The position numbers were made by a program, and so were the translations under genes. From Octopus sinensis (lineage: Eukaryota), in NCBI RefSeq assembly GCF_006345805.1, contig NC_043017.1, positions 4,526,001 to 4,590,000 on the forward strand: DNA of 64,000 bases, written 5' to 3'. The notes beneath the pieces are model-generated. The model was given only the letters and a program-made list of their open reading frames with translations. It had not been told where the DNA came from and ran no database searches. Shown here one piece after another: positions 8,060 to 34,655 of the stretch; positions within the stretch are counted from its first letter, which is position 1; each line of letters opens with the position of its first letter.

Positions 8060-9011
<952 letters not shown>

Positions 9012-13527: not shown

Positions 13528-14475
13528 ATGGCAAACGAAATAAATGAGAAAAAGGTAAAATATAAAACAGGATCTAAAAAGATTGATTTTCCTGATGAGA
13601 CATTCAAAGAGATAGGAAAAACATTGTACCACTGTGATATCTGTAAAAAGTCATTTTCTCAAAATGGTAACCTAACTACTCACAAACGTATTCACACAGG
13701 AGAGAAACCATATAACTGTGACATCTGTGGTAAATCCTTCACTCAAAGTGGGGTCTTGACTAAACACAAACGGATCCATACAGGGGAGAAACCATATTAC
13801 TGTAATATTTGTGATAAATCCTTCTCTCAGATGTGGGTCTTAACTAAACACAAACGGATCCATACAGGAGAGAAACCATATCACTGTAATATCTGTGGTA
13901 AATCATTCTCACAGAATTGTAATTTAACTAAACACAAACGAATTCATACTGGAGAAAAGCCATATCACTGTGATATCTGTGATAAATCCTTTTCTGAAAG
14001 TAGTAACTTAACCGCTCATATACGCATTCATACAGGGGAAAAACCTTATTGTTGTGACATCTGTGGTAAATCTTTCTCTGGAAATTGTGACTTAACTAAA
14101 CACAGACATATTCACACACGAGAGAAGCCGTATGAATGTGATATTTGTGGTAAATCCTTTTCTAGAAATGGTGAATTAACTTCTCATGTACGCATTCATA
14201 CAGGAGAGAAACCTTATGACTGCGACATCTGTGATAAAGCATTCTCTCGAAATAGTGAATTGGTTACTCACATACGCATTCATACGGGAGAGAAGCCATA
14301 TCACTGTGATATCTGTGGCAAATCATTCACTCAGAATCATCATGTAATTAAACACAAACGCACTCATACAGGAGAAAAGCCATATCTCTGTGATGTCTGT
14401 GGCAAATCATTCTCTCTCACTGGTAACTTAACCAGACACAAGTATGTACATACAGAAGAGAAGCCATATGACTGA
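13528..14475 (+). CDS. C2H2 zinc-finger protein, 315 aa, 10 tandem fingers
   Basis: ATG-initiated ORF with leader [20 protein letters not shown] and CxxC-12-HxxxH repeats joined by TGEKPY linkers. Acceptor tttcag at 13169. Confidence 0.93.
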
Positions 14476-14570
14476 TATTCTTGGAAAATAATTCTCTTTA
14501 AAAAAATCGTGAAACTACACACCTAAGTAGTCTTTACAAAAATAACTATCAGTATAGCAAGTTATTCAAA

Positions 14571-14588
14571 TATATATATGTGTGTATG

Positions 14589-14638
<50 letters not shown>

Positions 14639-14660
14639 TAGACATATGTATATATATATG
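14571..14660. repeat. (TA)n microsatellite
   Basis: Pure TA run at about 14593-14636 with degenerate flanks. Confidence 0.95.
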
Positions 14661-14917
14661 TAACTTAGAATAACTTAAAAAGGTTTTGGCAAGTATTGGC
14701 CCAGGCCATGTCTAACTTAATAGCACCACCTGGTGAAGTCTTTCAATTCAGGATTTGGGCACCAAGGCCCATTCGAGCAGAGAGTTATTGTTTGCGGAGA
14801 CATATCCGGGTGTGGGTGGTTTGTCCGGGACTGTTTAAAGAAATTTGTCCAAAGACTTCTTGAATTTTGTGTGGTCAGTTTCTGTTTTGACGTGTTCTGG
14901 TGTAATATATATATATA

Positions 14918-15134
14918 CGAGGTGGTGCTGGAAAGTTCATGGCTTTAAGGGTATCACAAAGGGCCTGGCTGGAGGACCAACCTTCCGAGTTCTTTTACAG
15001 GGCTTAGAAAAACTGAAGGACCACTGCAACAAATGTGTGAATCTGAGAGGGGGACATGTTGAATTATATCAAAATTAACTGATCCTTCTGTATTTTCTTT
15101 TACCCAAAACCAGGAACTTTTCAGCACCCCCTTG
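14918..15134 (+). mobile_element. Internally deleted mariner element
   Basis: TIRs cgaggtggtgctggaaagttc / gaacttttcagcacccccttg with TA on both sides. Mariner C-terminal remnant GLEKLKDHCNKCVNLRGGHVE. Confidence 0.75.
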
Positions 15135-15644
15135 TATCTGTTAAGATCATAAATGTATTTACATAGTTACGAAAATATAACAATGTGATAACAACCTCCC
15201 AAAATGATATTCCTCATCATGTGATTGGTACAGCCTATCGTTGGGATGCCATTCACAGCTATATCTTCATTGGTGAGATGATTTAGCACTGCAACTTCTT
15301 TTAATAGATGCATTCACTCAGAATTCTCATATATATTTCATGTAACACATTTCCAGAAGTGGGGGGGGGGGGGAATGCTGACCATTCATTTGACATTGTT
15401 GGTAGATTGCTGAAAAATATTTTCTAATAAATCATTATTGCAACTGTTATCAATGCATAAACCATGCAAAAGTACTTCAATATACCATAATCATATATGT
15501 AATAAACAATATACCATAATCATATGTAAATATGATTGTGGTGTATTCTGGATTTTATGTACATTATTTTTGCTGTAAAATCTATTTAGTAAATAACCCA
15601 TCAAGGAAAGGATTCTCTTCTTGATTTATGTTATTTTATCATTT

Positions 15645-16042
15645 ACTGGCAGTATCGCCCGGCGTTGCTCGGGTTTGTAAGGGAAATAACTATATAAGCA
15701 TTTTTAGAGATGTTAAATATAATAGCATCTCAATATGGCTAACCACAAAGGGGGGGGGGGTTACTGTAGCTTTTTACGTTCTGAGATTTGATAATAAATT
15801 TTTAGAGAGTTACTTCCCTTATATATGCCAAAAATGCATTAAAAATGGGAAAAATTGATGGTAAATTTTTTTTAAATCGTAAACTCATCGTAGACATGTG
15901 CTAATACCCAGAAGGGCTCGATGTGAATCACGACTATAAGATACCCGGTTTTGGTTAAACTGCACTGCAAAATGTGGGAGTAGTTAGGAATCTAAATCGT
16001 AGGAGACAGACAGCACACAACCTCACTTTTATATATAAAGAT
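15645..16042 (+). mobile_element. Non-autonomous Helitron-like (HINE/Lep1-style) element
   Basis: 5' cagtatcgcccggcgttgctcggg hairpin and 3' ttttatatataaagat. Shares its 5' end with 50930. Confidence 0.55.
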
Positions 16043-16140
16043 ATGATAATGATTCCTTCATGACTTGATTAATAAGCCAAATATTAATTTTTTATGTTTC
16101 AATGTAAACTTCATTTTAATATATATATGCAACCTAGGAA

Positions 16141-16590
16141 ACCAAGCTGGCAGAACTGTTAGCGTTCTGGGTAAAATGTTTAGTGACAGTCTTTCCATCT
16201 TCATGTTTTGAGTTCAAATCCTGCCAAGGTTAACTTTGCTTTCCATCCTCTTGAGGTTGATAAAATCAGTACCAGTTGTGCGTTGAGGTTGATGTAATTG
16301 ACTTGTCCGTTCCCCTGAAATTGTTAGCCTTGTGCCAAAATTTGAAAACAATATACATATATACAAAGTGAGACAGCAGGGTGGCAAAATAGTTAGCATA
16401 CTAGGTGGAATGTGGCTAAAGTATTTCGTTCTGTCTTCACGTTCTTCTGAGTTCAAATTCCACTGAGGTCAACTTTGCCTTTCATCCTTTTGGTGGTTGA
16501 TAATCTAAGTACCACCTGAGCACTGGGGTCGATGTAATTGATTTACCCACTGCCCCAAAACTTCTGGCTTTGTGCCAAAATTTGAAATCA
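16141..16590 (+). mobile_element. Two tandem degenerate SINE copies (family A variant tail)
   Basis: Two units of ctggcagaa...gagttcaaat...tttgcctttcatcct...gtgccaaaatttgaaa. Confidence 0.65.
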
Positions 16591-16928
16591 ATTTGAGATG
16601 AACCTGAGTGGTTGAATGATGAAGATGGTGGTAAAAAGAGGAAAAATTGGTGAGTCCTGTGTAAACGAATGGTAGAAATAAAGTTGACAGCTAAGTGTCT
16701 GATAGGGTAATGAAAGAGTCTTAGTGTAGGGAAAGCAATAGTAGTAGACTTGGCAAGGGGCAAAGGGGACATTAAATGATGATGATTTTATAAAAGGAAA
16801 TGTGATGACAAAGGAATGATTATCATATGGACTTCATTAGCTTACAGTTGTTTCTGCTATAAATGCAGTGCACTCTTAGTTGAGTGCTTGAGTAACACCT
16901 TATAGCTTCAAACACACACACACACACC

Positions 16929-16959
<31 letters not shown>

Positions 16960-17481
16960 TCTTGTTTCAGTCATTTGACTGTGGCCATGCTGGAGCACCA
17001 CCTTTAGTCAAGCAAATCAACCGCAGGACTTATTCTTTGTAAGCCTAGTACTTATTTTATTGGTCTGTTTTGCTGAACCACTAAGTTACGGGGACGTAAA
17101 CACACTAGCATCAGTTGTCAAGCGATGTTGGCGGGACAAACACAGACACACAAACATATATACACACATGCATATATATGACAGTGTGTGTGTATATATA
17201 TATATATATAGAGAGAGAGATGAAAAATGTGTGTTTGTATGTACCCTTTTCTTCATATGACTGTAAATAAGTAATGTTATTCATTTCCAGTTTCCCTTGA
17301 AAAATATGTCTGGCTACATTATCTTGCTTGGGAACATGAGGGTTAGTCACAAGAAGGGCATCTAGCCTTAAAAAATCTGCCTCAGAAAATTCCATCTGAC
17401 CCATGCAAGCATAGAAAAGAGGACGTTAAATGACAAAGACAGTAAAAGATCCTGACTGGCCATTCATGTCTTTCTACATAC

Positions 17482-17875
17482 CATCATCATCATCATCGTT
17501 TAACGTCCACTTTCCATTCTAGCGTGAGTTGGACGATTTGACAGGTCTGGCGAACCAGATGGCTGCACCAGGCTCCAATCTGATCTGGCAGAGTTTCTAC
17601 AGCTGGATGCCCTTCCTAATGCCAACCACTCCGAGAGTGTAGTGGGTGCTTTTTATGTGCCACCGGCACGAGGGCCAGTCATGCAGTACTGGCAACAACC
17701 ATGCTCAAATGGTGCTTTTTATGTGCCACCTGCACAGGAACCAGTCCAGTGGCACTGGCAACGACCTCGCTCGAATGTTTTTTCACGTGCCACCAGCACA
17801 AGTGCTAGTAAGGCGGCACAGGTAACTATCACGCTCGAATGGTGTTTTTAATGTGACATCGGCTCGGAGCCCAGC
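17482..17875 (-). mobile_element. RTE-like LINE 3' UTR with (GAT)n tail
   Basis: catcatcatcgtttaacgtcc start, ggatgcccttcctaatgccaacc core, and gtgctttttatgtgccacc repeats. Confidence 0.75.
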
Positions 17876-18782
17876 TTGTTGCTCTGGCCCCGATCTCACT
17901 CGTATGGTTCTCTTAGTGCTCCACCAGCACAGTTTTTATATTCACTCATCAGCTTCTGGATGATTACTGTGCAACTAGTGATTGAATTGCATGAGAGGTG
18001 ACAAAATTCTGATGAGTTATCTATATGTAGAGATTTCAGCATCTGCCATAAACACTGGATATATTCCAACAAAACTGACATTCGTGACAGACTCTGTTGA
18101 GATTTCTCTGAGGCATACAAATTAACCAATATTGTTGATTCTCTAACTTGTGTTCCAAACGTTAGTATCTGCTTGATCTTTTCCTTACTACACATAAATC
18201 ATTACACTACAACTGTTATCTCTGCTTAACAGATCAGATTACACTTCCATTGTGTTTATTGATGTGCTGAGCAAAGACTCTTTTGATGTGCCATTCTGTT
18301 TTCATATGCTGTGAACAGATGTGAAGGACAGTATTTTTCCAGGCCAATTCCCCACTTGAATATTGCTTTAGATCTAAAGTAGTGGTTCTCAGTCAAGGTC
18401 CATATGACCCTTGGGGGTCTGTATATCAGATTTTGCTGTTAATAAAAGGATTATATTTCTACAAAATATAAAATATTTTAGCAATTTTTTTTTATACAAT
18501 TCCTAATAATATTTCATTATAAAATTACAATAGGACCTTTTATATATATAATGAAAGGCAATGGAAGTCCAATAGTGTAAAACAGGAATCCAAAGGATCC
18601 ATAGGCAAACATGGTTGAGAATTACTGATCTAGATTATCAAAAGTTGCATTTCTTCCACAAAAGCCTTACATTTAACCTTGGTTTACTCCATAATATGCT
18701 TCTGCTTTGCTCATTTCAACCACTATTTCTACCTTTATCATCGAAATAAGAATGATACTTAGGTGGGAGCGTTAAGTAGTGA

Positions 18783-18969
18783 TTCTTTTACTTGTTTCAG
18801 TCATTTGACTGCGGCCATGCTGGAGCACCGCCTTTAGTCCAGCAAATCGACCCCGGGACTTATTCTATCAGTCTCTTTTGCCGAACTGCTAAGTGACGGG
18901 GACGTAAACACACCAGCATCGGTTGTCAAGCAATGCTAGGGAGACAAACACAGACACACAAACATATAT

Positions 18970-19002
<33 letters not shown>

Positions 19003-19173
19003 CATATATACGACGGGCTTCTTTCAGTTTCTGTCTACCAAATCCACTCACAAGGCTTTGGTTGGCCCGAGGCAATAGCAGAAGACACTTGCCCAAGGTG
19101 CCACGCAGTGGGACTGAACCTGGAACCATGTGGTTGGTTAGCAAGCTACTTACCACACAGCCACTCCTGCGCC
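18783..19173 (-). mobile_element. Full-length tRNA-head CORE-type SINE (resembles octopus OR-type SINEs)
   Basis: Head ggcgcaggagtggctgtgtggtaag...ggttcagtccca, CORE-like ccttgggcaagtgtctt, central (TA)/(TG) repeat, tail gaaacaagtaaaag. Confidence 0.85.
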
Positions 19174-19220
19174 ATATGTATATAAATGTAATGTTATTAT
19201 CAGTTCAAATATGCCAATTT

Positions 19221-19425
19221 CATGTTTGAACTCATAAATAGGCCTTTTGCTGTGTTTTGTCATGGGAAAAATTTCTCACTGTAGACAAATGGTGTAAATA
19301 ACACCTAAATCAGAAAATTTCTCACTACAGACATGATTTAGGGGTATTTACACCATTTGTCTACAGTGAGAAATTTTCTCCTTAAGAAAACACAGTGAAA
19401 GGCTTGTTTACAAGTTCAAACTAAT
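19221..19425. repeat. ~200-bp imperfect foldback element
   Basis: Arms aaaatttctcactgtagacaaatggtgtaaata and tatttacaccatttgtctacagtgagaaatttt, extending outwards. A related end lies at about 32980. Confidence 0.7.
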
Positions 19426-19715
19426 GCCAAAATGTTAAAGAACACTGAGACAGCTATGCTAATTCTGTTCTGTTAAAGATTCATCAGAAGGATGGTTCGT
19501 GTGATTTCTGGAGGAAAGCCATTTGAATATGTCATCATCATCATCCTAGTCAGGTGTCACACTAAGTGATGCTGTGGTCATCACGATGTCTTGCTACCTT
19601 CTCCTGTCCTCTACCCCATGGACAGCTGAGAATAAAGACAATCTTTCAGCCAAGAAGTGGGTGGTCTGCCTCTTTTACGTCTGCCGTTCACCTTGCCAGT
19701 TATAATCGTTATCTT

Positions 19716-20086
19716 GTGGAGGAGCAATGGCCCAGTGGTTAGGGCAGCGGACTCGCGGTTTCGATTCCCAGACCGGGCGTTGTGAGTGTTTATTGAGCGA
19801 AAACACCTAAAGCTCCACGAGGCTCCGGCAGGGGATGGTAGTGATCCCTGCTGTACTCTTTCACTACAACTTTCTCTCTCTCTTACTTCCTGTTTCTGTT
19901 GTACCTGTATTTCAAAGGGCCGGCCTTGTCACTCTCTGTGTCACGCTGAATATCCCTGAGAACTACGTTAAGGGTACACGTGTCTGTGGAGTGCTCAGCC
20001 ACTTACACGTTAATTTCACGAGCAGACTGTTCCGTTGATTCGGATCGACCGGAACCCTCGTCGTCGTAACCGACGGAGTGCTTCCA
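19716..20086 (+). mobile_element. tRNA-head SINE family C, full length
   Basis: gcaatggcccagtggttagggcag...gtcgtaaccgacggagtgct. Near-identical copies at 34289 and 47941. Confidence 0.8.
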
Positions 20087-20260
20087 TTCATATAATCGTT
20101 CTCTGAAAAAAATTATTATAAACAAAAAAAGAAAAACACTATAAACAACACTTAAAGCTGAAACATGCGTGAATTGCTGAAAGCAATAAAAAATATAATT
20201 GCTGTATCCAATAATTTTCAAGAATTTTTTTTAACCATCGATAAATCTTTCTGGGACACC

Positions 20261-20407
20261 CGTTATATCGAAACTGTGGCTAAGGATATAGAATCTAACT
20301 TTGAAACGATTTACGTCATTTCGAAAAAAACTATAAGACGCGAAATGGTAAATCGCTGTTAACATCTTGGAACGATAAGTTGACGAAGATTTCAATATAT
20401 CTGTCAG
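20261..20407 (+). promoter_or_regulatory. Putative promoter / non-coding first exon of the 22731 ZNF gene
   Basis: atcgaaactgtggctaa motif; donor-like cag|gtaatg at 20408. Confidence 0.35.
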
Positions 20408-20660
20408 GTAATGTGTCTAAATGATAGAATAACCATCTTCAAGACCGCAGTAATTTTACAGAAACGACAAACCTTAGGGATATCTCTTCTTTGACATTAA
20501 TGCTTATACTCTTTCACACCACCAGGAAAGTCCCACCTCTTTATTCCAGAAGGCATCGCCCTATTTCTTTAGTTTTGTCTTTTTTATTCACTTTTTATTA
20601 TTATTATTATTAATTTTCCAAAGAATGAAATTTGAAAATAACACGTCCGGTTCGTTTCTG

Positions 20661-21040
20661 GGTAATACTTGAGAACAGTGGTCCTGGTGCGCGCACTCGC
20701 GTACTCGCACTAGCTAGTCGTGACTAGTCGATCCTTACTTTGTGTTTTTTTTTTGTGTTATTTACTTTGTTTAACAAAAATTATTTATTTTGGTGTTTTA
20801 TTAGGTTGTCCCAAAAGTTCGTAAACACTTGCGAAAATTGAATTTTTATTCGCCAAGCACTAAAAAACAATAAAAATTATTCCTCAAAATAAAGACCATT
20901 ATTTTCCAAGACTTTCTACGAACTTTTGGGACAACCTTATATTTACTTTGCTAGGTAGTCGTTGTAGGATCGACTAGTCACGTCTAGCTAGCGCGACTAC
21001 GCGAGTGCGCGCACCGGGATCGCTGTTCTCATGTAGTACC
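20661..21040. mobile_element. Merlin-type MITE (same family as 3691, opposite orientation)
   Basis: TIRs ggtaatacttgagaacagtgg / cgctgttctcatgtagtacc. Perfect 8-bp TSD cgtttctg at 20653-20660 and 21041-21048. Confidence 0.85.
20801..20939. mobile_element. 139-bp mariner-type MITE nested in the Merlin-type MITE
   Basis: TIRs aggttgtcccaaaagttcgta / tacgaacttttgggacaacct with TA duplication. Confidence 0.8.
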
Positions 21041-21685
21041 CGTTTCTGCATACGTAAATATGAGGACGCACGAAAAGTGTTTGTCTTTCAAGGTGGTCTA
21101 TCCTGGACTGTCTCATGTTTTTTTTCTTTTATATCAAAATTTCCCTCATCTACCATTTTTCTCTCATAGCGCACCCTGAACTATATTATCTAATTGTACC
21201 CATTTAGAAAACGGATAATGTAGTCCTGAGTACACTAATGCCATATGGTGCGTTACCTACGCACAATGGAGAAGCAAATTTTGAAAAAGAATTTCTCCAA
21301 ATAAAAAAACATTTCCATTTCATTTGTGCAACGCACTGGGAGGCAAAAACATAGGTTTTCTAAATGTGTCTTCAATAATGCTTCAGCAGTGATCAAACTG
21401 GTGTTTTAAAAACGGTTCCAACTGTGACCATCTCGTTTTTTAAAACGCCTTAGCTGTAACCATCGTGTCGTTTTTAATGTCCCCTGTCACCCGTTTTTTA
21501 AAAAAGGATGCATTGGATAACGTAGTCTACTTTACCCGAAAAATAAAAGTGACTGAATGAAGGTCTTTCGTCGTAAGGCTGTAGATGAGAGAAACAACGA
21601 GCGAAAGGCTTCTGTAAGGTCAACTGCTGTCGCCCAACATGCTAGAAATAACAGCTACATTGTTCGTCGTTATATAAATTTCCTT

Positions 21686-22075
21686 ACTCTTTTACTTGTT
21701 TCAGTCATTTGACTGTGGCCATGCTGGAGCACCGCCTTTAGTCGACCAAATCGACCCCTGGACTTATTCTATCGGTCTCTTGCCGAACCGCTAAGTTACG
21801 GGGACGTAATCACACAACCATCGGTTGTCAAGCGATGGTGGGGGGGGGACAAACACAGACACACAAACATATACACACATACATATATATATATATATAC
21901 ACACACACACATATACGACGGGCTTCTTTCAGTTTCCGTCTACCAAATCCACTCACAAGACTTTGGTCGGCCCAAGGCTATAGTAGAGGACACTTGCCCA
22001 GGTGCCATGCAGTGGGACTGAATCTGGAACCATGTGGTTGGTAAGCAAGCTACTTACCACGCAGCCACTCCTGTG
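21686..22075 (-). mobile_element. Full-length CORE-type SINE
   Basis: Same family as 18783. Confidence 0.85.
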
Positions 22076-22179
22076 ATTCTCTGTAAAATAATTGATGGGA
22101 TGGTCAAGCCTGGAATGCATTCAATCACAGGTCAACTGGAACAGAGCTGGCATCTTTTCTGTTGTTGCCACAGTTTTCT

Positions 22180-22320
22180 TAGCAGTTCGGCAAAAGAGAC
22201 CGATAGAATAAATGCTGGGCTTACAAAGAATAAGTCCTGGGGTCGATTTGCTTGACTTAAAGGCAGTGCTCCAGCATGGCCACAATCAAATGACTGAAAC
22301 AAGTAAAAGAGAGTAAAAAG
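22180..22320 (+). mobile_element. CORE-type SINE, 3' fragment
   Basis: ttcggcaaaagagaccgatagaataa...tgactgaaacaagtaaaagag. Confidence 0.8.
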
Positions 22321-22730
22321 AATCTGAAAAGCTGTTGTCTGCAAATATGTAGACTTCAGACAAGGTTATATGATAGTATTTTGATGAATTAAAAAGTGAA
22401 TTTCAGTCATTGAGGTAAATGTTTATGTCAGGAGATTGTTAATATAGAAAAGTAATAAAATTTTTACATAAGTACTCCCTATATCTTATACTATTTCTTT
22501 ATTTCAGAATATCAGACAACATTGGTATAAAATAATATATATATCATCTAATATAAGACTGAAGAAAGATATTATACACAACAAAATTTACAAATGAGTT
22601 AGCAACTTCTGTCGTCAGCAAAGATCACAACTGATGGAAATATGATGTAGAAATGTTTACTAGAAAGGCAATATGAAAACAAGAAGAAACAAAATCTCTG
22701 TCTGTATATTGTGATGAGGGAAGAAAAATA

Positions 22731-24086
22731 ATGGAAAAGGAATTGTCCAAGAACCAGTTTAAATGTAACACACAGTCTAAAATGATTGATTTTCCTGATG
22801 AGATGGGAAGGAAATTGTACCACTGTGATATCTGTAAAAAGTCCTTCTCTCAAAAAAGTAAGCTTACCACTCACAAGCGTATTCATACAAGAGGAAAACC
22901 ATATCATTGTGACATCTGTGGTAAGTCGTTTTCTCTAAGAAGTGACCTGACTAATCATGAAAATATGCATACAGGTAAAAAACCATATCACTGTGACATC
23001 TGTGGTGAATCCTTCTGCAAAAGTAGTACTTTAACTAGTCACAAACGTATCCATACAGGTGAGAAGCCATATCACTGTGATACCTGTGGCAAATCATTCT
23101 CTCATGGAAGTACGTTGACATCACACAAACGCGTTCACACAGGAGAAAAGCCTTACCACTGTAATATCTGTGGTAAATCATTCTCTCGAAATGGATCTTT
23201 AATTATTCACAAGCATATTCATACTGGAGAAAAACCATATTGTTGTAATATCTGTGGTAAATCTTTCTCTCAAACAAGTCAGCTAAGTACTCATAAGCGT
23301 ATTCATACAGGTGAAAAACCATATTGCTGTGATGTCTGTGGTAAATCATGCTCTCAAAAAAGTCAGTTAATTACTCATAAGCGTGTTCATACTGGAGAGA
23401 AGCCGTATCACTGCGAAATCTGTGGAAAATCATTCTCTGCCTCTGGTCACTTAACTACCCACAAATTTATTCATACAGGAGAAAGACTGCATCACTGTGA
23501 TATCTGTGGTAAATCATTCACTCACGGAAACACCTTGACTACACATAAACGTATTCATACCGGGGAAAGACCATACCACTGTGATATCTGTGGTAAATCA
23601 TTCTCGCGAAATAGTTACTTGACTTCTCACAAACGTAGTCATACAGGAGAGAAACCATATCGCTGTGATATCTGTGGTAAATCATTCTTTCGAAATGTTG
23701 ACTTAACTAGTCACAAACATATTCATACGGGAGAAAAACCATATCAGTGCGATATCTGTGGTAAATCAGTCTCTCAAAGGTCTCACTTGGCCAGTCACAA
23801 ACTAATCCATACAGGAGAAAAACCACATGGCTGCGATATCTGTGGTAAATCATTCTCTTTAAGATCTATATTAACTAACCACAGATATATTCATACAGGA
23901 GAGAAACGATATGGTTGTGTTATCTGTGGTAAATCATTCTCTGTAAGTGCTAACTTAAGTAAGCACAACCGTATCCATACAGGAGAGAAGCCATATCAAT
24001 GTGATACATGTGACAAATCATTTTCTCAAAGATATTCCTTGACTAGACACAAATTTATTCATACGGGGAAGAAAGAATATAACTGA
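22731..24086 (+). CDS. C2H2 zinc-finger protein, 451 aa, 15 tandem fingers
   Basis: ATG-initiated ORF with leader [24 protein letters not shown] and a regular 28-aa finger period. Acceptor atttcag at 22507. Confidence 0.94.
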
Positions 24087-25565
24087 TATTTGTGGTAAAT
24101 CCTTTCTCATAAATGTTACTGAGCTACACATGCATTTATGGATACTGAAGAAACCACTGTAACAATGTGAAAAGGGATGTTTTTGTATAAGATATATCTA
24201 ACGAATGTACTTTAAAAAATATGATGGTGTGAAAACAACCACCCAACACTTCATTATATACACAAACACATACACACGTCCTCAACTATTCCTACATTGG
24301 TGAGACGGCTTGCTAGTCATTTCAGAATGCTCATATATATTCCATCTAGCATATTTCCAAAGGGAAAAAAAAAGCATTGTATTGATTTATTTGACATTGT
24401 GAATAAATGACTGAGGATTGTATTGTCCTAAATCAGGATCAACTTCTCTCTACAGTTATCATGTTAGAAATAAACACAGGATTCATGGCAAAAATTCTTT
24501 TGTCATACCATAGTAGTATGTATGTGCATGTAAGCCCTTATATATATTTTGGTGCAAGTGTGTTGCTTAGTGGTTAAGGTGTTGGACTCATGATTGTATG
24601 ATTTAGGTTTCAATTCCTCAATCAAGCAATGCAATGTGTTCTTGAGCAAAATACTTCATTCCACTTTGCTCCAGTCCGCTCAGCTGGCAAAAATGAGTAA
24701 TCCTTTGATGGACCAGTGTTCTGTCCAGTGGGGAATGTATGCTCCACATAAACTGGGAAACTAGCCCTATGATTTGTGAAGGATCTTTATCCTTTATCAT
24801 CCTATATATATTATGGATGTTATTTATATACATTTTTCATGTATTCTGATTTGGAGCTTAGTGTATATCTGTCTTCAAGGAAGTGATAATAAGATCTTAT
24901 ATTTATCATTTCTTGTATTCCGTTCTGTGAGGTGGTTGTTGTTAGGGAGGGCATCCAGCTGTAAAGATCATGCCAAAATGGACACAGAAGTCTGGTGCAG
25001 TCTTCTGCCTGTCTGCCTCTTGTCAAACCATCCAACCCATGGCAGTTTGGAAGGTGGACATTAAATGATGATGATGATGTATTTATAGTGTAACTCCTCC
25101 ATGGCAGGTTGAATGTCACTTTGCGAGTGTCAGTGTAGCCTTGAACATAATATAAATGCAAAGTCCATGGTATAATTTATGAATCATCGTCTTCATCAGC
25201 ATTAATGTTTTTATAATGTCCATTCTGTATATTGGTTTGGATAGGAAAAATTTTCATTGATTGTGAAAGCCAACATTTGGATAAATAAACTTGTTTTGCA
25301 TTGGAAAAAGTGTGTTGATTCTGCTGGTGTTTATTTTGATTAATAAAGTTTTGTTTGAGCTGAGATATGTGCACCAGAATTTAAAGGTTAAAAGGAATCA
25401 AGTGATAAAGTTCAAAATCTCTCACCTTTCCCTCTTCTTTTTATTAAATCTCTAGAAGATGAAAATTCAATAAATTATTGAAATAACTTTTAAACAGTAA
25501 TAAGAGATTAGAAAATATAGGGAAATCGCTTTTAAATATATATTCAAAAATGGATGTCACTTTAA

Positions 25566-25918
25566 CCGTTTGGCATTTAAACTGGTTATATCCAGCCCAA
25601 ATATTTTATTTTATGTTCAAGGCGGCCAGATCTGGACTCTCACATGTAGCATACAATGTCATTTTAAAAATAAGCACTCTTAAAGCTACAAGATTAATTC
25701 TTAACAATGTGAATAAATAAACAATACATTTGACAGCAACCATCACCATTATTTAGCATCCATTTTCCCATCCTGGCATGGGTGGGTTGGTTGGTTTAAC
25801 AGGCGCTGGTTAAGCAGAAGACTGCACCAGGCTCCAATGTCTGTTTTGGCATGGTTTTTACAGCTGGATGCCCTTCCTAACACCAGCCACCATACAGAGT
25901 AATCTGAATGCCAAAGGG
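25566..25918. mobile_element. piggyBac-type MITE with a nested RTE tail fragment
   Basis: TTAA on both sides (25562-25565, 25919-25922). TIRs ccgtttggcatt / aatgccaaaggg. RTE tail at about 25740-25895. Related pieces near 33800-34160 and 46000-46245. Confidence 0.65.
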
Positions 25919-26316
25919 TTAAAGCAAAGAAGTTTTACACAAAGAGTGAAATGAAACAAAAGCAAAATTAATGCTACAATCCTTGGGAATATGTAAGAGT
26001 ATATCTCAACTCTTAGAAGAGCTATGCCACTGGTCCTACCAACATTGAATGCAGTATGGCTCTTAAGTATGCACAAATCCTTCAACACATCCAAAAAAAG
26101 ATTACCATTAATTCCTGAGCACATTTATGTTTTTAATGCTTTTGACGCTGCTAGATTGAATGATGCTGCTCAAGTGTCGAAACTAGTGATATTCACTTGG
26201 CAGCAGATGATGGGAATGCATATTTTTTGTGCCTTAGTCTCAATATTTAGTTGTCCTTCATTCTCATAAATTGGAAATTGTTCATGGTTTGTGGAAATTA
26301 CACTGATATTGTTTTA

Positions 26317-26882
26317 TTGGGTTGTCCGGAAAGTTCATGCCGATTTTTAAAGGAAAGAAAAAGGTCAATAAATACTTGCCATTATATTTTTAATCAACGA
26401 AATATGAACCATTTTGTTGCACAATGTGTCTCCATCTTTCCTTTAACTTGAAAATACCCTCTTCCCAGAATTGAGGTGGTTTCATGGCAAAGAATTCATC
26501 AAGGTATCTTTTTACGTCATCCAAGGAATTGAAATTTTTACCATTAAAACTATTCTGCAGAGACCTGAATAAGTGGAAATCCGAAGGAGCAATATCTGGT
26601 GAATATGGAGGGTGGGGTAACACATCCCAGCCGAGCTGCAGCAATTTTTGTCTGCTTCCCAAAACATCAAGTGCCGAAAATGAATTTTCTTATCTTCCAT
26701 TTTAAAGGGTTACAGAATCAACACAGGTTATAGGAACATAAACCTTCTTCCACGAAAAGATAGCTTAAACTGTGCTCTAAATGGAGGTGTAGTCAAATCC
26801 TATTTTATGGACTCAATCATGTTCTAAAATAAGTCGGAAGGTAAGCTGCTATAAATCGGCACGAACTTTCCAGACAACCCAA
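26317..26882 (-). mobile_element. Internally deleted mariner (D,D34D type), 566 bp
   Basis: 30-bp TIRs with 2 mismatches and TA duplication. N-terminus MEDKKIHFRHLMF joined to C-terminal LGWDVLPHPPYSPDIAPSDFHLFRSLQN...KLKERWRHIVQQNGSYFVD*. Confidence 0.9.
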
Positions 26883-27039
26883 TACTTCAGAGATAATCTT
26901 AAGCTAAGACTTAGATAGTGACGTCTAGCCTTGTGGGATTTTGTGGCATGCATATATATAAAGCAAACATAAGGAATGACTTTATCTAGGAATCTAATCA
27001 TCATTATCATCATTTAACATCCTTTTTGCTTCCCAACCA

Positions 27040-27167
27040 TGACTCCAGATTCAGTCCCGCTGCGTAGCACCTAGGACAAATGTCTTCTACTATAGTCTCA
27101 GGCCAATCAAAACCTTGTCACTGGAGTTTGGTAAACAGAAACCTAAAGAAGCTCATCATATATACAT

Positions 27168-27213
<46 letters not shown>

Positions 27214-27375
27214 GTGTGTGTGTGTCCCCCCACCACCGCTTGACAACCGGTGTTGAAATGTTTACATACCCCGTAACTTAGCGGTTCGACAAAAGAGGCC
27301 CATAGAATATGTACCAGGTTTTAAAAGTATTTTTTTTTAAAAGTACCGAGGTCAATTCATTCGACTAAAATTCTT
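27040..27375 (+). mobile_element. Degenerate CORE-type SINE
   Basis: ttcagtcccgctgcgtagcacctaggacaaatgtcttctactatag...ttgacaaccggtg...cttagcggttcgacaaaagag. Confidence 0.7.
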
Positions 27376-27662
27376 CAGAATGTAAATATACGTATGCAAC
27401 GTAAAATGTGGCACGAAGAATTCGCTTATAATAGTCACTGCTCAACAATTTCGCATGCGCAAAGTAAGACCTTGAAATTTTATGCCATCATTTTACTCCG
27501 CTATAAGCAGTGTTGACACACACAAACCAAATGTATGACCTTTTTATATTTATTATAAAACAAAACTCGTAAATTTGGTGTCTCGTAAACCGACTCCTCG
27601 TAAAGTGAGGTATTACTGTATTTGAAATCCAGAGATGCAATTCAGTACAACAGACTGCCGTC

Positions 27663-27777
27663 TAAGAAACACACAAAAGCCGTTCGATTCACTTCAACAT
27701 TTAAGTTTAATTAAACTGACAAATTAAACTTAAACTTAAATGTTGAAGTGAATCGAACGGCTTTTGTGTGTTTCTTA
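27663..27777. repeat. Perfect 48-bp inverted repeat with a 19-bp spacer
   Basis: taagaaacacacaaaagccgttcgattcacttcaacatttaagtttaa (27663-27710) and its exact reverse complement (27730-27777). Confidence 0.9.
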
Positions 27778-27959
27778 AATGGCTTACAAACACCTTCGAC
27801 GCTGCAATTGTTTTCGTTTCAGCACACGATCTCAGATCAAATCACTTGCTATGCAAGTACATCTCCGTAAGACTGCTCTTTGACAAACATCTAAATACAA
27901 GGTGCTACCGACAACGACTTTTTATGAGTTAATTACCCTTCTGAAAAGAACAATTAAGG

Positions 27960-28224
27960 GAAAGTATTTGCGCATGCGAAGTGGGCGCGGCGCGCTTTCC
28001 GCTTCTATCTTGAAAATAAACACGTGCGTCACTTTGTTTATCTTTCTCGGCTGCAAGTGACAATTGTATTCAATCATATCCTTTATAAAACACTTCCGTA
28101 AGTATTCAGTAAAGACTAATTGGCATTCTTTCGATATAACTCAACAAAATCAAAACATTTCCGTGGAAGCAAATGACAGTTTCTTGCTTGGAAATTTGCG
28201 GATTTTACATCACCCATGAAACCG
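27960..28224 (+). promoter_or_regulatory. CpG-rich putative promoter / first exon of the 29.9-kb ZNF gene
   Basis: NRF1-like tgcgcatgcg (27969-27978), gggcgcggcgcg, E-box cacgtg (28021). Donor-like cc|gtaagt (28098) and ccg|gtaaga (28225). Confidence 0.4.
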
Positions 28225-28385
28225 GTAAGAAGAAATATGCAAGGCTTTCTTTCTCCAAGTTTGAAATGGAATCTTTATTATGATAAAAAAAAATGATCTT
28301 ACATAGAGAGGGACGTTACTAGACAAACTGGAACAAAAAATGTTTTATGAGTTCGGATGGATATCGTTTTAAAATTTTACTAAAA

Positions 28386-28736
28386 TCGATTTCCGTAAAA
28401 AACTTCTTTTTTTTTTACATATGGGCTTGCGGGAACTTTTGAAGTAATGAGAGCGAAAGAGACTAAGAGAAAGCGATTGTATGACGAGGGAAGTTCTTTT
28501 GAAGTTACCGTGCATGGGAAGCATTGATATGTCTGTGTGTTTGATGGGGTGTGGGAGACAGACAGTGTGTTGTGTAAGTGAAGTGCTTCTGTTAGTGTGT
28601 GTGAAGAGACAGAGTAATGTGTGAAAGAGAGAGATAACTGAAATTTTTTACTCGGTGTATGTGTATATGTATGTATATTACTGCAAAAGTTCCCGCAAGC
28701 CCATATGTAAAAAAAAAATTTTTTTACGGAAATCGA
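28386..28736. mobile_element. MITE-like element with ~60-bp inverted arms
   Basis: tcgatttccgtaaaaaa...tacatatgggcttgcgggaacttttg versus caaaagttcccgcaagcccatatgta...ttttttacggaaatcga. Outer ends and TSD not resolved. Confidence 0.6.
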
Positions 28737-29499
28737 CGGAAAGGTCTACTAGAGACGAAAGATCGCCGAACTTTTTTTTTTAATTAAAAAGAAAACGAAT
28801 AAAAGTTTAAAAGATCGAACTCGGCAGCCTATAAGGCCACTCCAAGTTTGAAATGAGACGTTGCTGGCATAATTTTATGCTTGACTTTTATGCTTTGATT
28901 TTCTCGAGTTATATCGAAGGAATGCCGACTATTTTATGCTTGACTAAAGGCGGTGCTCCTGCATGGCCGCAGTCAAATGACTGAAACAAGTAAAAGAGAG
29001 AAAAGATAAAAACTGGTATCTGTAGTTTATCAGTATCATGTACACTACTAAAATTATAGTAAAATAATTGCTGAATCTTAAATTTTTTAGTATCTTATAT
29101 AACTGATAATATTTCTTTATTATTTCAGAATATCAGATGACGTTGGCATTAAAAAGGATTATCAGAAGCACCATCACCTATTAACGACTAAGGAATATGT
29201 TATACACAACAGTTGTGTAAATTTGGCTACATAAATCTATGGAACAATTAGTGTGGAATACTACCTCTGAGTGATAATATCAACAAAATTTGTTTACTTG
29301 ACTATCTGAATGTGTGCAAGCTTGTTTTGCATTCTACTTAAACGTGGACAGATGTGAAAAAAGAAAAAGAGTTTGCAGTATCTTCAGCATTTGACAAATA
29401 TCACTGTTTAATAGAAGTACAGCAGTAGGTATTGTCTTTTAGGAATAAGATTTAAAAATAGAAAGAAAGAAAATATCAATGTATTGTGAAAGAATAATT

Positions 29500-29899
29500 A
29501 TAGATGATGAATTATTTCTGAACAAAGTTAAAATTATGACGATTTAAAAGGATTGATTTTCATTGTAAAAATATGAAATAGGGAACTCATATTATTGTGA
29601 TATCACTACAAACTCATTCTCTTAAAAAGGCAAGCTGACTGTTCCCAAATGTATTCCTATAGGAGAGAAGCCTTATCACAGTGATACCTGGGGAATCTTT
29701 TTCTCACAATAATAGCTTTACTAATTACAAAGATACACATACAGTAGAAAAACCATAACCATACCACAGTAATAACTGGTAAATCATTCTCTGCAAGAAA
29801 TAACTTCACTGCCTGCATATCCATTTATACAGGAGAGAAGCCATATCAAGTGAAATTTGTTGGAAATTGTTCTTTGAAATTAATCGTTTACCTGAACTC
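29500..29899 (+). pseudogene. Decayed ancestral 5' part (leader plus ~4 dead fingers) of the 29.9-kb ZNF gene
   Basis: ATA GAT GAT GAA TTA at the position of ATG GAA AAT GAA TTA. TAA at 29545. Finger remnants such as YYCDITTNSFS*KGKLT and GEKPYHSDTWG, with indels. Confidence 0.75.
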
Positions 29900-31012
29900 A
29901 TGCACACTAATATAGAAGAAAAACCATTTTGCTGTAATATTTGCGGCAAATCTTTCTCTAAAATTCGCAGCTTGACGAAGCATAAATACATTCATACCAG
30001 AGAAAAACTATATCGCTGTGAAATCTGTGGTGCATCTTTCTCAAATGGAAATAACTTAATTTGTCATAAACGCATTCATACAGGTGAGAGACCGTACCAC
30101 TGTGACATCTGTGGTAAATCGTTTTTGCAGCATAATCATTTGACCAAACATAAACACATTCATACTGGAGATAAACCTTACCACTGTGACATCTGTGGCA
30201 CATCATTCTCTCAAGGTGCTCATTTAACTATACATAAACGAACTCATACAGGTGAGAAACCATATCGTTGTGATACCTGTGGTAAATTATTCTCCAGAGG
30301 TGATCAGTTAGCAAAACATGAGCATATTCATACTGGGCAAAAACCATTTCACTGCCACACCTGTGGTAAATCTTTCTCTCAAGAAACTCATCTTACTACT
30401 CACAAGCGCATTCATACAGGAGAGAAGCCATATCACTGTAATATCTGTGGTAAATCATTCTCACAGAATTGTAATTTAACTAAACACAAACGCATTCATA
30501 CTGGAGAAAAGCCATATCACTGTGACATCTGTGATAAATCATTTTCTGAAAGTAGTAACTTAACCGCTCACATACGGATTCATACAGGGGAAAAACCTTA
30601 TTGTTGTGACATCTGTGGTAAATCTTCCTCTGGAAATTGTGACTTAACTAAACATAGACATATTCATACAAGAGAGAAGCCGTATGAATGTGATATTTGT
30701 GGTAAATCCTTTTCTAGAAATGGTGAATTAACTTCTCATGTACGCATTCATACAGGAGAGAAACCTTATGACTGCGACATCTGTGATAAAGCATTCTCTC
30801 GAAATAGTGAATTGATTACTCACATACGCATTCATACGGGAGAGAAGCCATATCACTGTGATATCTGTGGGAAAACATTCACTCGAAGATACGGTTTAAC
30901 TAAACACATGTACACGCACACTGGTGAAAAGCCATATCACTGTGATATCTGTGGTAAATCATTTTCTCAAAATGGTAACTTAACTAAGCACAAACGTGTT
31001 CACACAGGATAG
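29900..31012 (+). CDS. C2H2 zinc-finger protein, ~370 aa from the first in-frame ATG, 13 fingers
   Basis: Uninterrupted ORF (track start at 29867 is TTG; first ATG is 29900). Ends HTG then TAG. Acceptor tttcag at 29128. Confidence 0.85.
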
Positions 31013-31020
31013 AAGCTAGT

Positions 31021-31730
31021 CAAGGTGGCACTGGCATTGGTCACGCTCGGATGGTGCTTTTTTCATGCCACCGGCACAGAAGCCAGTCGAGGCAGCACTG
31101 GCATCGGCCACGTTCGGATGGTGCTTTTTATGTGCCACCGGCACAGGAGCCAGTCGAGGCGGTGCTGGCATCAGCCATGTTCGGATGGTGCTTTTTATGT
31201 GCCACCGGCACAGGTATCACAACTACTATTTCCATTGATATTTATTTCGATGTTCATGTACTTGACTCAATAGGTCTCCTCAAGCACAACGGGTTGTTCT
31301 GAAATCCAAGGTACTTTGAATAGGCAGGGGTATGCAGAACTGGTGCAGGAAGCAGCCTGGGTCTTTACAGTCACAGCATATCTCCAGAGATCTCGGTCCT
31401 TCATCATCATCATCGTTTAACGTCCGTTCTCCATGCTAGCATGGGTTGGACGGTTCGACCGGGGATCTGGGAAGCCAGGGGCTGCACCAGGCTCCAGTCT
31501 TATCTGGCAATGTTTCTACAGCTGGATGCCCTTCCTAACGCCAACCACTCCGTGAGTGTAGTGGGTGCTTTTTACGTGCCACCTGCACAGGTGCCAGGCG
31601 AGGCTGGCAACGGCCACGGTCGGATTGGTGTATTTTACGTGCCACCGGCATGGAAGCCAGTGGAGGCGGCGCTGGCATCGGCCACGAGTCGGATAGAGCT
31701 TTTTACGTACCACCAGACCAGGGATCCTGG
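31021..31730 (-). mobile_element. Composite of two RTE-like LINE 3' ends inserted just after the ZNF stop
   Basis: Three 67-bp units (atggtgc at 31051, 31118, 31185), an RTE ORF-end remnant, then a second copy beginning catcatcatcgtttaacg at about 31400. Confidence 0.75.
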
Positions 31731-32159
31731 CTGAATCATCACTTATTGATTCACAAACACATTCATACGGGATAGAAGTCATATCATTGTTGCATGTAGT
31801 AAATCACTTGCAGCAGGAAACAAAAAATCGACCAAGTGACACGGGTGTGATGGGGGGGGAGGACACGTGACTTGACGAAACCACTTCATTTCCCGCCTTC
31901 TGACAAACAGATTGATATTTGTGCTAATCGAACCGCAAACTTCAGAACTCCCAAATTTGATTGATTTATTGGTGCTGCCCTGACCATTGATGAAGAAGTT
32001 GTTTCACAACCTATGTGGTGACTGCACGTCATCTTAGGCAAGTGTAATGTAACCAGCTGTGAATTGATGTGAAATTTGGTCGATGGATACTGCCCACCTT
32101 ATTACCGTATGTATCTGTGTCCAGGTTTATATTTACCAGAGTTGTGCCAAAAAGTGCAA

Positions 32160-32506
32160 CCAACCACATGGTTCAGGGTTCAGTCCCACTGCGTGACACC
32201 TTGGGCAAGTGTCTTCTACTATAGCCCCGGGCCGACCAATGCCTTGTGAGTGGATTTGGTAGACGGAAACTGAAAGAAGCCCGTCGTATATATGTATATA
32301 TATGTGTGTGTGTCTGTGTTTGTCCCCCTAGCATTGCTTGACAACCGATGCTGGCGTATTTATGTCCCCGTCACTTAGCAGTTTGGCATAAGAGACCGAT
32401 AGAATAAGTACTGGGCTTACAAAGAATAAGTCCTTGGGTCTAGTTGCTCGACTAAAGGCGGTGCTCCAGCATGGCCACAGTCAAATGACTGAAACAAGTA
32501 AAAGAG
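32160..32506 (+). mobile_element. CORE-type SINE, near full length
   Basis: caaccacatggttcagggttcagtcccactgcg...gaaacaagtaaaagag. Confidence 0.85.
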
Positions 32507-32668
32507 TTCAATAAAATAAGCATGAGACTGACATAAGGACTGCAGTTGATAAGATTGAGGAAACCTTTGGAGAATATTGCTATGGCTGTAGTCCAGCAAC
32601 TCAACATATCTTATGAGGTGACATCAGCAAGCAGTGACGTGTATAAACACAAAATCCTTATCAGTTCC

Positions 32669-34288: not shown

Positions 34289-34655
34289 GTGGAGACGCAA
34301 TGGCCCAGTGGTTAGGGCAGCAGACTCGCGGTTTCGATTCCCAGACCGGGCGTTGTGAGTGTTTATTAAGCGAAAACACCTAAAGCTCCACAAGGCTCCG
34401 GCAGGGATGATGGTGATCCCTGCTGTACTCTTTCACCACAACTTTCTCTCACTCTTACTTCCTGTTTCTGTTGTACCTGTATTTCAAAGGGCCGGCCTTG
34501 TCACTCTCTGTGTCACGCTGAATATCCCCGAGAACTACATTAAGGGTACACGTGTCTGTGGAGTGCTCAGCCACTTACACGTTAATTTCACGAGCAAGCT
34601 GTTCCGTTGATTGGATCAACCGGAACCCTCGTCGTCGTAACCGACGGAGTGCTTC
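34289..34655 (+). mobile_element. SINE family C nested in an RTE tail
   Basis: The RTE tail breaks at gagcggacgt (34290) and resumes ggacgttaaacgatgacgatg at about 34688. Confidence 0.8.

What the first reader, a model, noticed from the sequence alone, without database searches (positions are those of the whole stretch)
13861..30870. Five-finger cassette transplanted between two otherwise different ZNF genes, with mostly silent differences
13861-14318 and 30413-30870 encode QNCNL-ESSNL-GNCDL-RNGEL-RNSEL as fingers 4-8 of one gene and 7-11 of the other, while flanking fingers are unrelated. By-eye comparison gives 11 differences in about 458 bp, 9 synonymous and 2 replacement (F/S, V/I). The last ~200 bp has only one difference. 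Inference: ectopic gene conversion or unequal crossover moves multi-finger modules as units, and the silent bias suggests selection on both copies. This would be a combinatorial route to new DNA-binding specificities.
Basis: partly seen in the sequence, partly recalled or inferred. Interest (0 to 1): 0.75.

Follow-up and report, generated by a model that had tools for sequence, protein, structure and literature searches.

The report
Gene conversion between two octopus zinc-finger genes
Two old, otherwise dissimilar zinc-finger genes lying 16.5 kb apart in an octopus gene cluster share one 458-base, five-finger stretch that is 97.6% identical, most likely a patch copied from one gene into the other; this is a clean example of a known process, not a new one.

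Summary
Window 13861-14318 and 30413-30870 align without gaps and differ at 11 of 458 bases: 9 silent and 2 replacements (F/S, V/I). They are fingers 4-8 of a 10-finger gene and fingers 7-11 of a 13-finger open frame. Finger pairs in this window average 71.7% identity, so the island is far beyond chance (P about 1e-51).

The genome is the Octopus sinensis assembly. It holds only these two copies; the next best match is 82%. The flanks of both genes have no close relative anywhere (best 78% and 75%). Silent-site divergence jumps from 0.08-0.12 inside the block to 0.6-2.7 outside. The block is therefore younger than its surroundings, not merely better conserved.

The best explanation is one ectopic (interlocus) gene conversion of about 460 bp between same-strand tandem paralogues. 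Its edges fall in the conserved linker and Cys-knuckle motifs. The direction is probably gene 1 to gene 2, on weak evidence. The silent bias is real (P about 1e-5). The clustering of differences in the first 260 bp is not significant (P = 0.19).

Gene 2 has lost its leader and first fingers. One replacement removes a core Phe that is F in 509 of 518 fingers. Short conversion tracts among poly-zinc-finger paralogues are already documented, so this is a new member of a known kind.

The parts
13528..14475 (+). Gene 1: intact single-exon C2H2 zinc-finger ORF of 315 aa, with leader [24 protein letters not shown] and 10 fingers
   Evidence: ORF lists; finger map; Pfam zf-C2H2 1e-61 and zf-H2C2_2 1.5e-93
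13861..14318 (+). Cassette copy 1: linker before finger 4 through the Cys knuckle of finger 9, covering fingers 4-8 of gene 1; probable donor
   Evidence: 97.6% identical to 30413-30870; only two copies above 82% in the genome; its likeness to the rest of the family (0.747) equals that of gene 1's own flanks (0.748)
29804..31012 (+). Gene 2: 402-codon stop-to-stop open frame with 13 intact fingers and first ATG at 29900; ends at a TAG five codons before the position where gene 1 stops
   Evidence: Pfam zf-C2H2 8e-68
30413..30870 (+). Cassette copy 2: fingers 7-11 of gene 2, probable acceptor; carries F->S (TCC at 30626-30628) at the core Phe of its third cassette finger
   Evidence: F occupies this position in 509 of 518 fingers sampled, and this is the only S. 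Gene 2's native fingers are less family-like (0.706) than the cassette (0.747), P = 0.065
29450..29603 (+). Decayed leader of gene 2, 76% identical to gene 1's leader region and interrupted by three in-frame stops
   Evidence: Local alignment score 96 against a shuffle maximum of 46; other genes' leaders score 75-79; translation
29604..29926 (+). About four decayed finger units of gene 2, with lost Cys/His ligands, stops and at least two frameshifts, upstream of the intact open frame
   Evidence: Three-frame translation; blastn similarity of ZNF arrays reaching 29674
22731..24086 (+). Gene C: 15-finger paralogue lying between gene 1 and gene 2 that did not take part; at most 85% identical to any gene 1 finger (82% to any cassette finger)
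   Evidence: no block above 78% anywhere in the genome
8835..8939 (+). Finger of the relic gene B (in-frame TAG) that is about 90% identical to 13795-13899, gene 1 finger 3 with the shared helix QMWVL; a possible older, shorter exchange
   Evidence: 75 of 84 bases identical for the finger, the only other pair above 87% in the window; sliding comparison

Best explanation
The window is part of a tandem cluster of single-exon C2H2 zinc-finger genes on contig C21 of the Octopus sinensis assembly.

Gene 1 (13528-14475) and gene 2 (29804-31012) are old, divergent paralogues. They lie on the same strand 16.5 kb apart, with another paralogue between them.

A single non-allelic (interlocus) gene conversion copied about 460 bp (13861 to between 14318 and 14332) from one array into the other. 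It overwrote five whole fingers without changing length or frame.

Both ends of the tract lie in the segments that all fingers share: the HTGEKPY linker on the left and the YHCDICG knuckle on the right. These segments supply the homology needed to start and resolve strand invasion between arrays that are otherwise about 70% identical.

The donor was probably gene 1. After the event the copies accumulated 12 point differences, almost all silent, which indicates purifying selection on the block.

Shown: the island, its uniqueness in the genome, the jump in silent-site divergence, the motif positions of the edges, and the decay of gene 2's 5' end.

Inferred: conversion rather than a double crossover, the direction, and the functional state of gene 2.
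For: - Exact tract: 11 mismatches in 458 bp, no indels. P = 1.7e-51 against the flank mismatch rate.
- Finger-pair background is 71.7 +/- 5.3%.
- Genome-wide there are only two copies; the next best match is 82%.
- The flanks of both genes have no close paralogue: best 78% and 75%.
- Cassette dS is 0.08-0.12. The 5' flank dS is 0.97-2.7 and the 3' flank dS is 0.56-0.72. Third-position identity is 94% inside against 53-67% outside.
- There is no collinear non-coding similarity between the two loci. The other repeats are roughly 200-400-bp interspersed elements at other offsets.
- Edges: mismatches stop at 13860 and resume at 14319, 14323 and 14333, that is in the linker and the Cys knuckle.
- Both arrays have exactly two fingers after the tract.
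- Mosaic blocks with sharp edges are frequent in other ZNF arrays of the same genome. L013/L025 share 5 fingers at 98.8% flanked by 81-82%; L004/L008 share 4 fingers flanked by 71 and 82%.
- GENECONV-detected short conversions among poly-ZF paralogues are published (PMC2604467). [quoted passage not shown]
- Direction: the cassette's mean identity to 495 other fingers is 0.747. Gene 1's flanks give 0.748 and gene 2's flanks 0.706.
Against: - No outgroup sequence could be obtained. Non-reciprocity, direction and date are therefore untested. Three protein searches found no protein carrying the cassette and exact look-ups failed.
- The direction test is weak (Mann-Whitney P = 0.065), and the larger reference set was chosen by similarity to the cassette.
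- A double crossover or two successive unequal exchanges would leave the same pattern in a single genome.
- Raw reads were not available, so an assembly or polishing artefact is not formally excluded.
- The genome search scores only about 40 of roughly 2,200-2,500 first-look candidates per query. 'Only two copies' rests on the best candidates being ranked first.
Confidence: 0.8

Rival explanations
1. Chimeric gene built by unequal crossovers. Two separate reciprocal exchanges, or one double crossover, between misaligned arrays placed gene 1's five fingers into gene 2 or the reverse. No non-reciprocal conversion is needed.
For: The same-strand tandem arrangement favours unequal exchange. Within-array finger duplications and copy-number changes, which are hallmarks of unequal crossover, are abundant in other arrays of this genome. 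L024 is an array of near-identical fingers, and L004 and L013 have 18-25% of finger pairs at or above 90%.
Against: A single unequal crossover gives one breakpoint and duplicates or deletes the 16.5 kb between the genes. Here there are two breakpoints 458 bp apart, no length change, and no collinear duplication of the intervening or flanking DNA. Two independent crossovers landing 458 bp apart is less parsimonious than one conversion tract of ordinary length.
Confidence: 0.1
2. Assembly or polishing artefact. Reads from one locus were used to build or polish the consensus of the other, creating a false shared block.
For: The assembly contains redundancy. L010 on unplaced contig C12650 is 100% identical over 15 fingers to L012 on C30. 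ZNF clusters are difficult to assemble. Gene A in the window has a frame break that could be an indel error.
Against: The two copies differ at 12 scattered sites. The block edges coincide with finger-motif boundaries in frame. There are no Ns in the window. Each copy is embedded in unique flanks that have no other match in the genome. Polishing errors do not normally replace 458 bp of a 70%-identical sequence. The silent-site bias of the differences is a biological signature.
Confidence: 0.04
3. Ancient whole-gene duplication in which five fingers were kept nearly identical by strong selection while the remaining fingers diverged, with no recombination.
For: Gene 2's decayed leader is most similar to gene 1's. 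Both arrays have two fingers after the block. dN/dS in the block is low, 0.05-0.09.
Against: Protein-level selection cannot hold synonymous sites. Third-position identity is 94% in the block against 53-67% in the flanks, and dS is 0.08-0.12 against 0.6-2.7. In-register flank fingers (65-79%) are no more alike than random finger pairs (71.7%).
Confidence: 0.02

Closest known systems
Interlocus (ectopic, non-allelic) gene conversion among tandemly clustered poly-zinc-finger paralogues, as detected with GENECONV in vertebrate KRAB/poly-ZF expansions (Emerson & Thomas 2009, PMC2604467)
   Same: A short tract of near-identity between paralogues that are otherwise divergent. The genes are tandemly clustered C2H2 genes, and the tract length of a few hundred bp is ordinary.
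   Different: The host is a cephalopod, with a KRAB-less single-exon family that has its own short N-terminal leader. I found no description of conversion tracts for octopus C2H2 genes; seven papers held the terms and none addressed it. The contrast of about 98% against about 70%, in genes with no other close relative, is unusually clean.
PRDM9 zinc-finger coding minisatellite, with finger shuffling by unequal crossover and conversion within one array (for example PMC3890296)
   Same: Whole 84-bp finger units are the currency of exchange, and breakpoints fall in conserved finger framework. The same genome also contains a PRDM9-like homogenised array (L024, mean finger identity 95%).
   Different: PRDM9 shuffling is allelic and intragenic, among near-identical repeats. 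Here the exchange is between two separate genes 16.5 kb apart whose fingers are otherwise about 70% identical.
Homogenisation of clustered cephalopod protocadherin genes by gene conversion (Albertin et al. 2022, PMC9068888)
   Same: The same animal group and the same proposed process acting in large tandem gene clusters.
   Different: In that paper it is inferred from species-specific clades of whole genes, not from a mapped tract. The paper reports the C2H2 expansion but no conversion for it.
Pseudogene-templated gene conversion of chicken immunoglobulin V genes
   Same: Cassette-like patches are copied between a damaged family member and an intact one in the same cluster.
   Different: The chicken process is somatic, AID-driven and programmed, always runs from pseudogene to functional gene, and recurs. 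Here there is one germline event, probably from the intact gene into the 5'-decayed one. This comparison is recalled from general knowledge and was not tested.

Membership tests
Interlocus gene conversion tract | A discrete segment of much higher identity than its surroundings between paralogues, with abrupt edges | tested here: met
   97.6% over 458 bp against 65-79% in adjacent in-register fingers; P = 1.7e-51
Interlocus gene conversion tract | The discontinuity also holds at synonymous sites, showing a different coalescence time rather than different constraint | tested here: met
   dS 0.08-0.12 inside against 0.56-2.7 outside; third-position identity 94% against 53-67%
Interlocus gene conversion tract | Collinear replacement with no change of length or frame, and no duplication or deletion of intervening DNA | tested here: met
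   Ungapped alignment in frame; no collinear similarity of flanking or intervening DNA
Interlocus gene conversion tract | Non-reciprocal transfer: donor unchanged and acceptor overwritten, seen as phylogenetic incongruence against orthologues | not testable with these tools
   No orthologous sequence from another octopus could be retrieved. Only a weak compositional hint of direction exists
Interlocus gene conversion tract | Reality of both copies in the organism, confirmed by spanning reads | not testable with these tools
   No read data. Indirect support comes from 12 locus-specific differences and unique flanks
Krueppel-type C2H2 poly-zinc-finger gene | Tandem 28-residue units C-x2-C-x12-H-x3-H joined by TGEKP-type linkers | tested here: met
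   10 and 13 consecutive 84-bp units; Pfam zf-C2H2 and zf-H2C2_2 far above their cut-offs
Krueppel-type C2H2 poly-zinc-finger gene | Sequence-specific DNA binding by the array | not tested
   No binding data. The contact residues (-1, +2, +3, +6) are identical in the two cassette copies
Simple recent whole-gene duplicate | Similar identity over the whole gene and its non-coding flanks | tested here: not met
   Flanking fingers are at background identity, and UTR and intergenic DNA are unrelated

The most novel reading that the evidence does not exclude
Multi-finger blocks are exchanged repeatedly among octopus C2H2 genes and are kept by selection as a way of building new DNA-binding specificities. 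Leaderless, half-decayed arrays such as gene 2 would persist in the clusters as reservoirs or test beds of finger modules. The silent bias in this block, the open 13-finger frame of a gene whose 5' end is dead, and the many mosaic blocks in the C28 cluster do not exclude this reading.
Probability: 0.12. Interest if true: 0.6.

Novelty: new member of a known kind. Interest (0 to 1): 0.3.

Why it matters
Octopus genomes carry one of the largest C2H2 zinc-finger expansions known, and how these arrays diversify is little studied.

This locus gives a clean, datable, single-event example of five fingers moving as a unit between two old genes. Such events mislead gene trees and dN/dS scans of the family. 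They can also give two proteins an identical five-finger recognition module in different contexts.

The locus is a useful marker for a genome-wide scan and for cross-species dating. It does not reveal a new mechanism.

Tried and rejected
1. Finding orthologues to polarise and date the event. Three homologous-protein searches were swamped by generic poly-ZF proteins: the cassette as a region of gene 1, the cassette alone, and the cassette inside a 1000-residue pseudo-query made with a stop-reading code to widen the length filter. In the long-protein range the result is inconclusive, because a true hit could be outranked.
2. Exact look-ups of five window proteins: none is in the collection.
I used those 30 loci as a sample instead. 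The sample is biased because it was chosen by similarity to the cassette.
4. Nested, more recent conversion of the last 200 bp: rejected as not significant (P = 0.19).
5. GC, GC3 and framework-codon choice as a direction test: no discrimination.
6. Positional homology of the flanks: in-register flank identity (mean about 73%) equals the background. Only the equal count of two fingers after the block and the leader similarity hint at old tandem ancestry.
7. A third-party donor, such as a transposon-borne array: none found genome-wide.
Full report
WHAT IS THERE

The window contains seven or eight single-exon C2H2 zinc-finger (ZNF) arrays on both strands, interspersed with transposon remnants. 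The whole genome is 2.72 Gb in 13,516 contigs, and the window is C21:4526001-4590000. A protein hit named Octopus sinensis lies on a contig of 15,106,159 bp, which is exactly the length of contig C30 of this genome. The most similar database proteins are from O. sinensis, O. vulgaris and O. bimaculoides. The source is therefore the O. sinensis assembly. This lineage is known for a very large C2H2 expansion (PMC9068888).

CHECK OF THE OBSERVATION

Window 13861-14318 and 30413-30870 align without gaps and have 11 mismatches in 458 bp. Read by codon, 9 differences are synonymous and 2 are replacements. The replacements are F/S at 14074-14076 and V/I at 14263. A further silent difference sits at 14319.

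The block is fingers 4-8 of gene 1 (13528-14475, 315 aa, 10 fingers, intact leader). It is also fingers 7-11 of the 13 intact fingers in the gene 2 open frame 29804-31012.

The one sub-claim that does not hold statistically is the significance of the quiet last 200 bp. A maximum chi-square permutation test gives P = 0.19.

IS IT MORE THAN CHANCE?

All fingers share framework and linker sequence, so the right yardstick is the identity of arbitrary finger pairs. In the window that identity has mean 71.7%, SD 5.3% and 99th percentile 83%. The five cassette pairs are 95-100%. The only other pair above 87% is 89%, discussed under 'Other things seen'.

Along the in-register diagonal the per-finger identities are 76, 65, 68 | 99, 95, 95, 100, 99 | 76, 79. 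At the flank mismatch rate the island has P = 1.7e-51.

UNIQUENESS

- A search of the whole genome with the block finds the two window copies (100% and 98%) and then nothing above 82%.
- The 5' flank of gene 1 has a best genome-wide match of 78%, and the 5' flank of gene 2 has 75%. Both values are background. Both genes are therefore old singletons.
- The same test on the neighbouring arrays A, C, E and F finds no block above 82% anywhere. In this stretch the event is isolated.
- Caveat: the tool scores only about 40 first-look candidates per query.

WHY RECOMBINATION AND NOT SELECTION OR DUPLICATION

- Silent-site divergence is 0.08-0.12 in the block, 0.97-2.7 in the three fingers to the left and 0.56-0.72 in the two fingers to the right. 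Third-position identity is 94% against 53% and 67%. Protein-level constraint cannot produce that, so the block has a much more recent common ancestor than its flanks.
- Non-coding DNA around the two genes shows no collinear similarity. The only other matches above 85% in the window are roughly 200-400-bp interspersed repeats at unrelated offsets. A simple whole-gene or segmental duplicate is excluded.
- The window has no Ns, and the two copies differ at 12 scattered sites. A collapse or copy-paste artefact is therefore unlikely, although reads were not available.

ANATOMY OF THE TRACT

Mismatches are dense up to 13860 and resume at 14319, 14323 and 14333.

- The left edge is the codons for HTGEKPY, the inter-finger linker.
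- The right edge is YHCDICG, the start of the next finger.

These are the segments most conserved among all fingers. They are where two arrays of about 70% identity offer enough local homology for strand invasion and resolution. The tract is 458 to about 472 bp, or 5.45 finger units, with no indel.

The genes lie on the same strand 16.5 kb apart. A 15-finger paralogue (gene C, 22731-24086) lies between them and was not involved. Two breakpoints, no length change and no loss or gain of intervening DNA fit a single non-reciprocal conversion better than unequal crossing-over.

POSITION IN THE ARRAYS

Counted from the 3' end, however, the block is in the same place in both genes, because exactly two fingers follow it in each.

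Gene 2 once had more fingers upstream. A recognisable leader remnant at 29450-29603 is 76% identical to gene 1's leader. It scores higher against gene 1's leader than against those of genes A, C and E (96 against 75-79; shuffle maximum 46). About four decayed finger units follow it, carrying stops, frameshifts and lost ligands.

The pair may be ancient tandem duplicates. The flanks, however, are no more alike than random fingers, so this remains a hint only.

DIRECTION

No outgroup could be retrieved. The only indication is likeness to the rest of the family.

| Finger set | Mean identity to 495 other fingers of this genome |
|---|---|
| Cassette fingers | 0.747 |
| Gene 1's own flank fingers | 0.748 |
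| Gene 2's own flank fingers | 0.706 |

The Mann-Whitney test gives P = 0.065. The trend is the same with the unbiased window-only reference set. This weakly favours transfer from gene 1 into gene 2. Base composition and framework codon choice do not discriminate.

SELECTION AND STATE OF THE COPIES

Ten of the 12 differences are silent, where 90.5 of 459 sites are silent (P = 4e-6). dN/dS is 0.05-0.09.

By my own hand calculation, if gene 2 were evolving neutrally about 45% of the differences should be replacements, and seeing 2 or fewer of 12 has P of about 0.04. The case for constraint on both copies is therefore suggestive, not strong.

The F->S change in gene 2 removes the hydrophobic-core Phe. 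That position is F in 509 of 518 fingers sampled, and this is the only S. One of the five transferred fingers is probably structurally impaired in gene 2. The V/I difference is at helix position +5, which is not a canonical contact. All contact positions (-1, +2, +3, +6) are identical in the two copies.

Gene 2's canonical start is dead. Even so, its 13-finger frame of 402 codons is open and all other ligand residues are intact. The adjacent roughly 480 bp carry many disabling lesions. This contrast argues that the 3' part is, or recently was, maintained, perhaps through the internal ATG at 29900 or an upstream exon. That is inference.

Gene 2 also ends five codons early at a TAG, immediately before an interspersed repeat.

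HOW COMMON IS THIS IN THE GENOME?

The 26 other arrays fetched are a biased sample, mostly the young C28 cluster. They show abundant mosaicism.

- L013/L025 share 5 fingers at 98.8% flanked by 81-82%.
- L004/L008 share 4 fingers at 95% flanked by 71 and 82%.
- L009/L021 share 4 fingers at 95% flanked by 67 and 86%.
- L006/L020 share 5 fingers at 97%.
- Many arrays carry internal finger duplications.
- One array (L024) is a minisatellite-like run of near-identical fingers with mean identity 95%.

Recombination in finger-sized units is therefore a general feature of this genome's ZNF clusters. The window's case stands out only because the background is so divergent.

COMPARISON WITH WHAT IS KNOWN

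- Emerson & Thomas (PMC2604467) ran GENECONV on lineage-specific poly-ZF paralogues. [quoted passage not shown]
- Wells et al. [quoted passage not shown]
- Albertin et al. 2022 invoke conversion for cephalopod protocadherins and describe the C2H2 expansion without mapping conversion in it.
- I found no paper describing conversion tracts in octopus C2H2 genes.

This is a new, unusually clean member of a known kind of event.

VERDICT

Interest is 0.3.

OTHER THINGS SEEN

- A relic array (gene B) shares a roughly 105-bp stretch at about 90% identity with gene 1 finger 3.
- Gene A has a frame break.
- The window holds a Merlin/IS1595-like and a Tigger/pogo-like transposase remnant.
- An unplaced contig duplicates part of C30 exactly.
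- C30 carries a tandem series of identical ZNF hits with a period of about 6.4 kb.

Noticed in passing
window 8835-8939 vs 13795-13899: A finger of a short relic array (gene B, 8322-9000, in-frame TAG at the helix start) is about 90% identical to gene 1 finger 3 and shares the unusual helix QMWVL. It is the only other finger pair above 87% in the window. It may be an older, one-finger conversion or a trace of shared ancestry.
   Followed up: partly
window 5910-7075: Gene A is split into two overlapping open frames (5910-6443 and 6407-7075), so a frameshift lies inside its fifth finger. It is either a young pseudogene or an indel error in the assembly.
   Followed up: no
window 29450-29926: Gene 2 has a decayed leader with three in-frame stops and about four decayed fingers directly upstream of a perfectly open 13-finger frame. 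The sharp contrast suggests that the 3' part is still maintained through another start.
   Followed up: partly
window 31013-31714: Gene 2 stops at a TAG five codons before the position where gene 1 ends. It runs straight into interspersed repeat copies (31031-31137 and 31395-31714 match 53229-53335 and 52949-53270 at 88-91%).
   Followed up: no
window 38393-39376 (-): A 327-codon open frame with an ISXO2-like (IS1595/Merlin-type) DDE transposase domain, Pfam PF12762 at 2.5e-16.
   Followed up: partly
window 49054-50759 (-): A Tigger/pogo-like transposase remnant: DDE_1 (3.6e-42) with an HTH_Tnp_Tc5 match, and an upstream CENP-B_N domain in a different, overlapping frame, so there is at least one frameshift.
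   Followed up: partly
window 19716-20084, 34286-34655, 47939-48299, and a second family at 32158-32518, 58302-58709, 61348-61731 and 62326-62706: Two families of roughly 350-400-bp interspersed repeats, SINE-like and 86-96% identical among copies, on both strands between the ZNF genes.
   Followed up: no
window 36925-37092 (-) and 72-155 (+): Isolated one- and two-finger ZNF relics outside the main arrays.
   Followed up: no
L024 (G000:C30:4458498-4461955): At least 18 consecutive fingers that are nearly identical to each other (helix QNSDLTK, mean pairwise identity 95%), one with an in-frame stop. This is a PRDM9-like homogenised coding minisatellite.
   Followed up: partly
L010 (G000:C12650:57716-61173) vs L012 (G000:C30:12691341-12694798): 15 consecutive fingers are 100% identical between an unplaced 283-kb contig and chromosome-scale contig C30. 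This is probably an uncollapsed haplotig or a redundant scaffold.
   Followed up: no
G000:C30:10159038-10198264: Seven equally scoring ZNF hits spaced about 6.4 kb apart (10159139, 10165564, 10171934, 10178350, 10184771, 10191185, 10197597). This looks like a recently amplified tandem repeat unit containing a ZNF gene.
   Followed up: no
L004 (C28:2413922-2417379, +) vs L013 (C28:2605889-2609346, -): 17 consecutive fingers at 99.1% identity in inverted orientation about 190 kb apart. This is a recent inverted segmental duplication within the C28 ZNF cluster.
   Followed up: no
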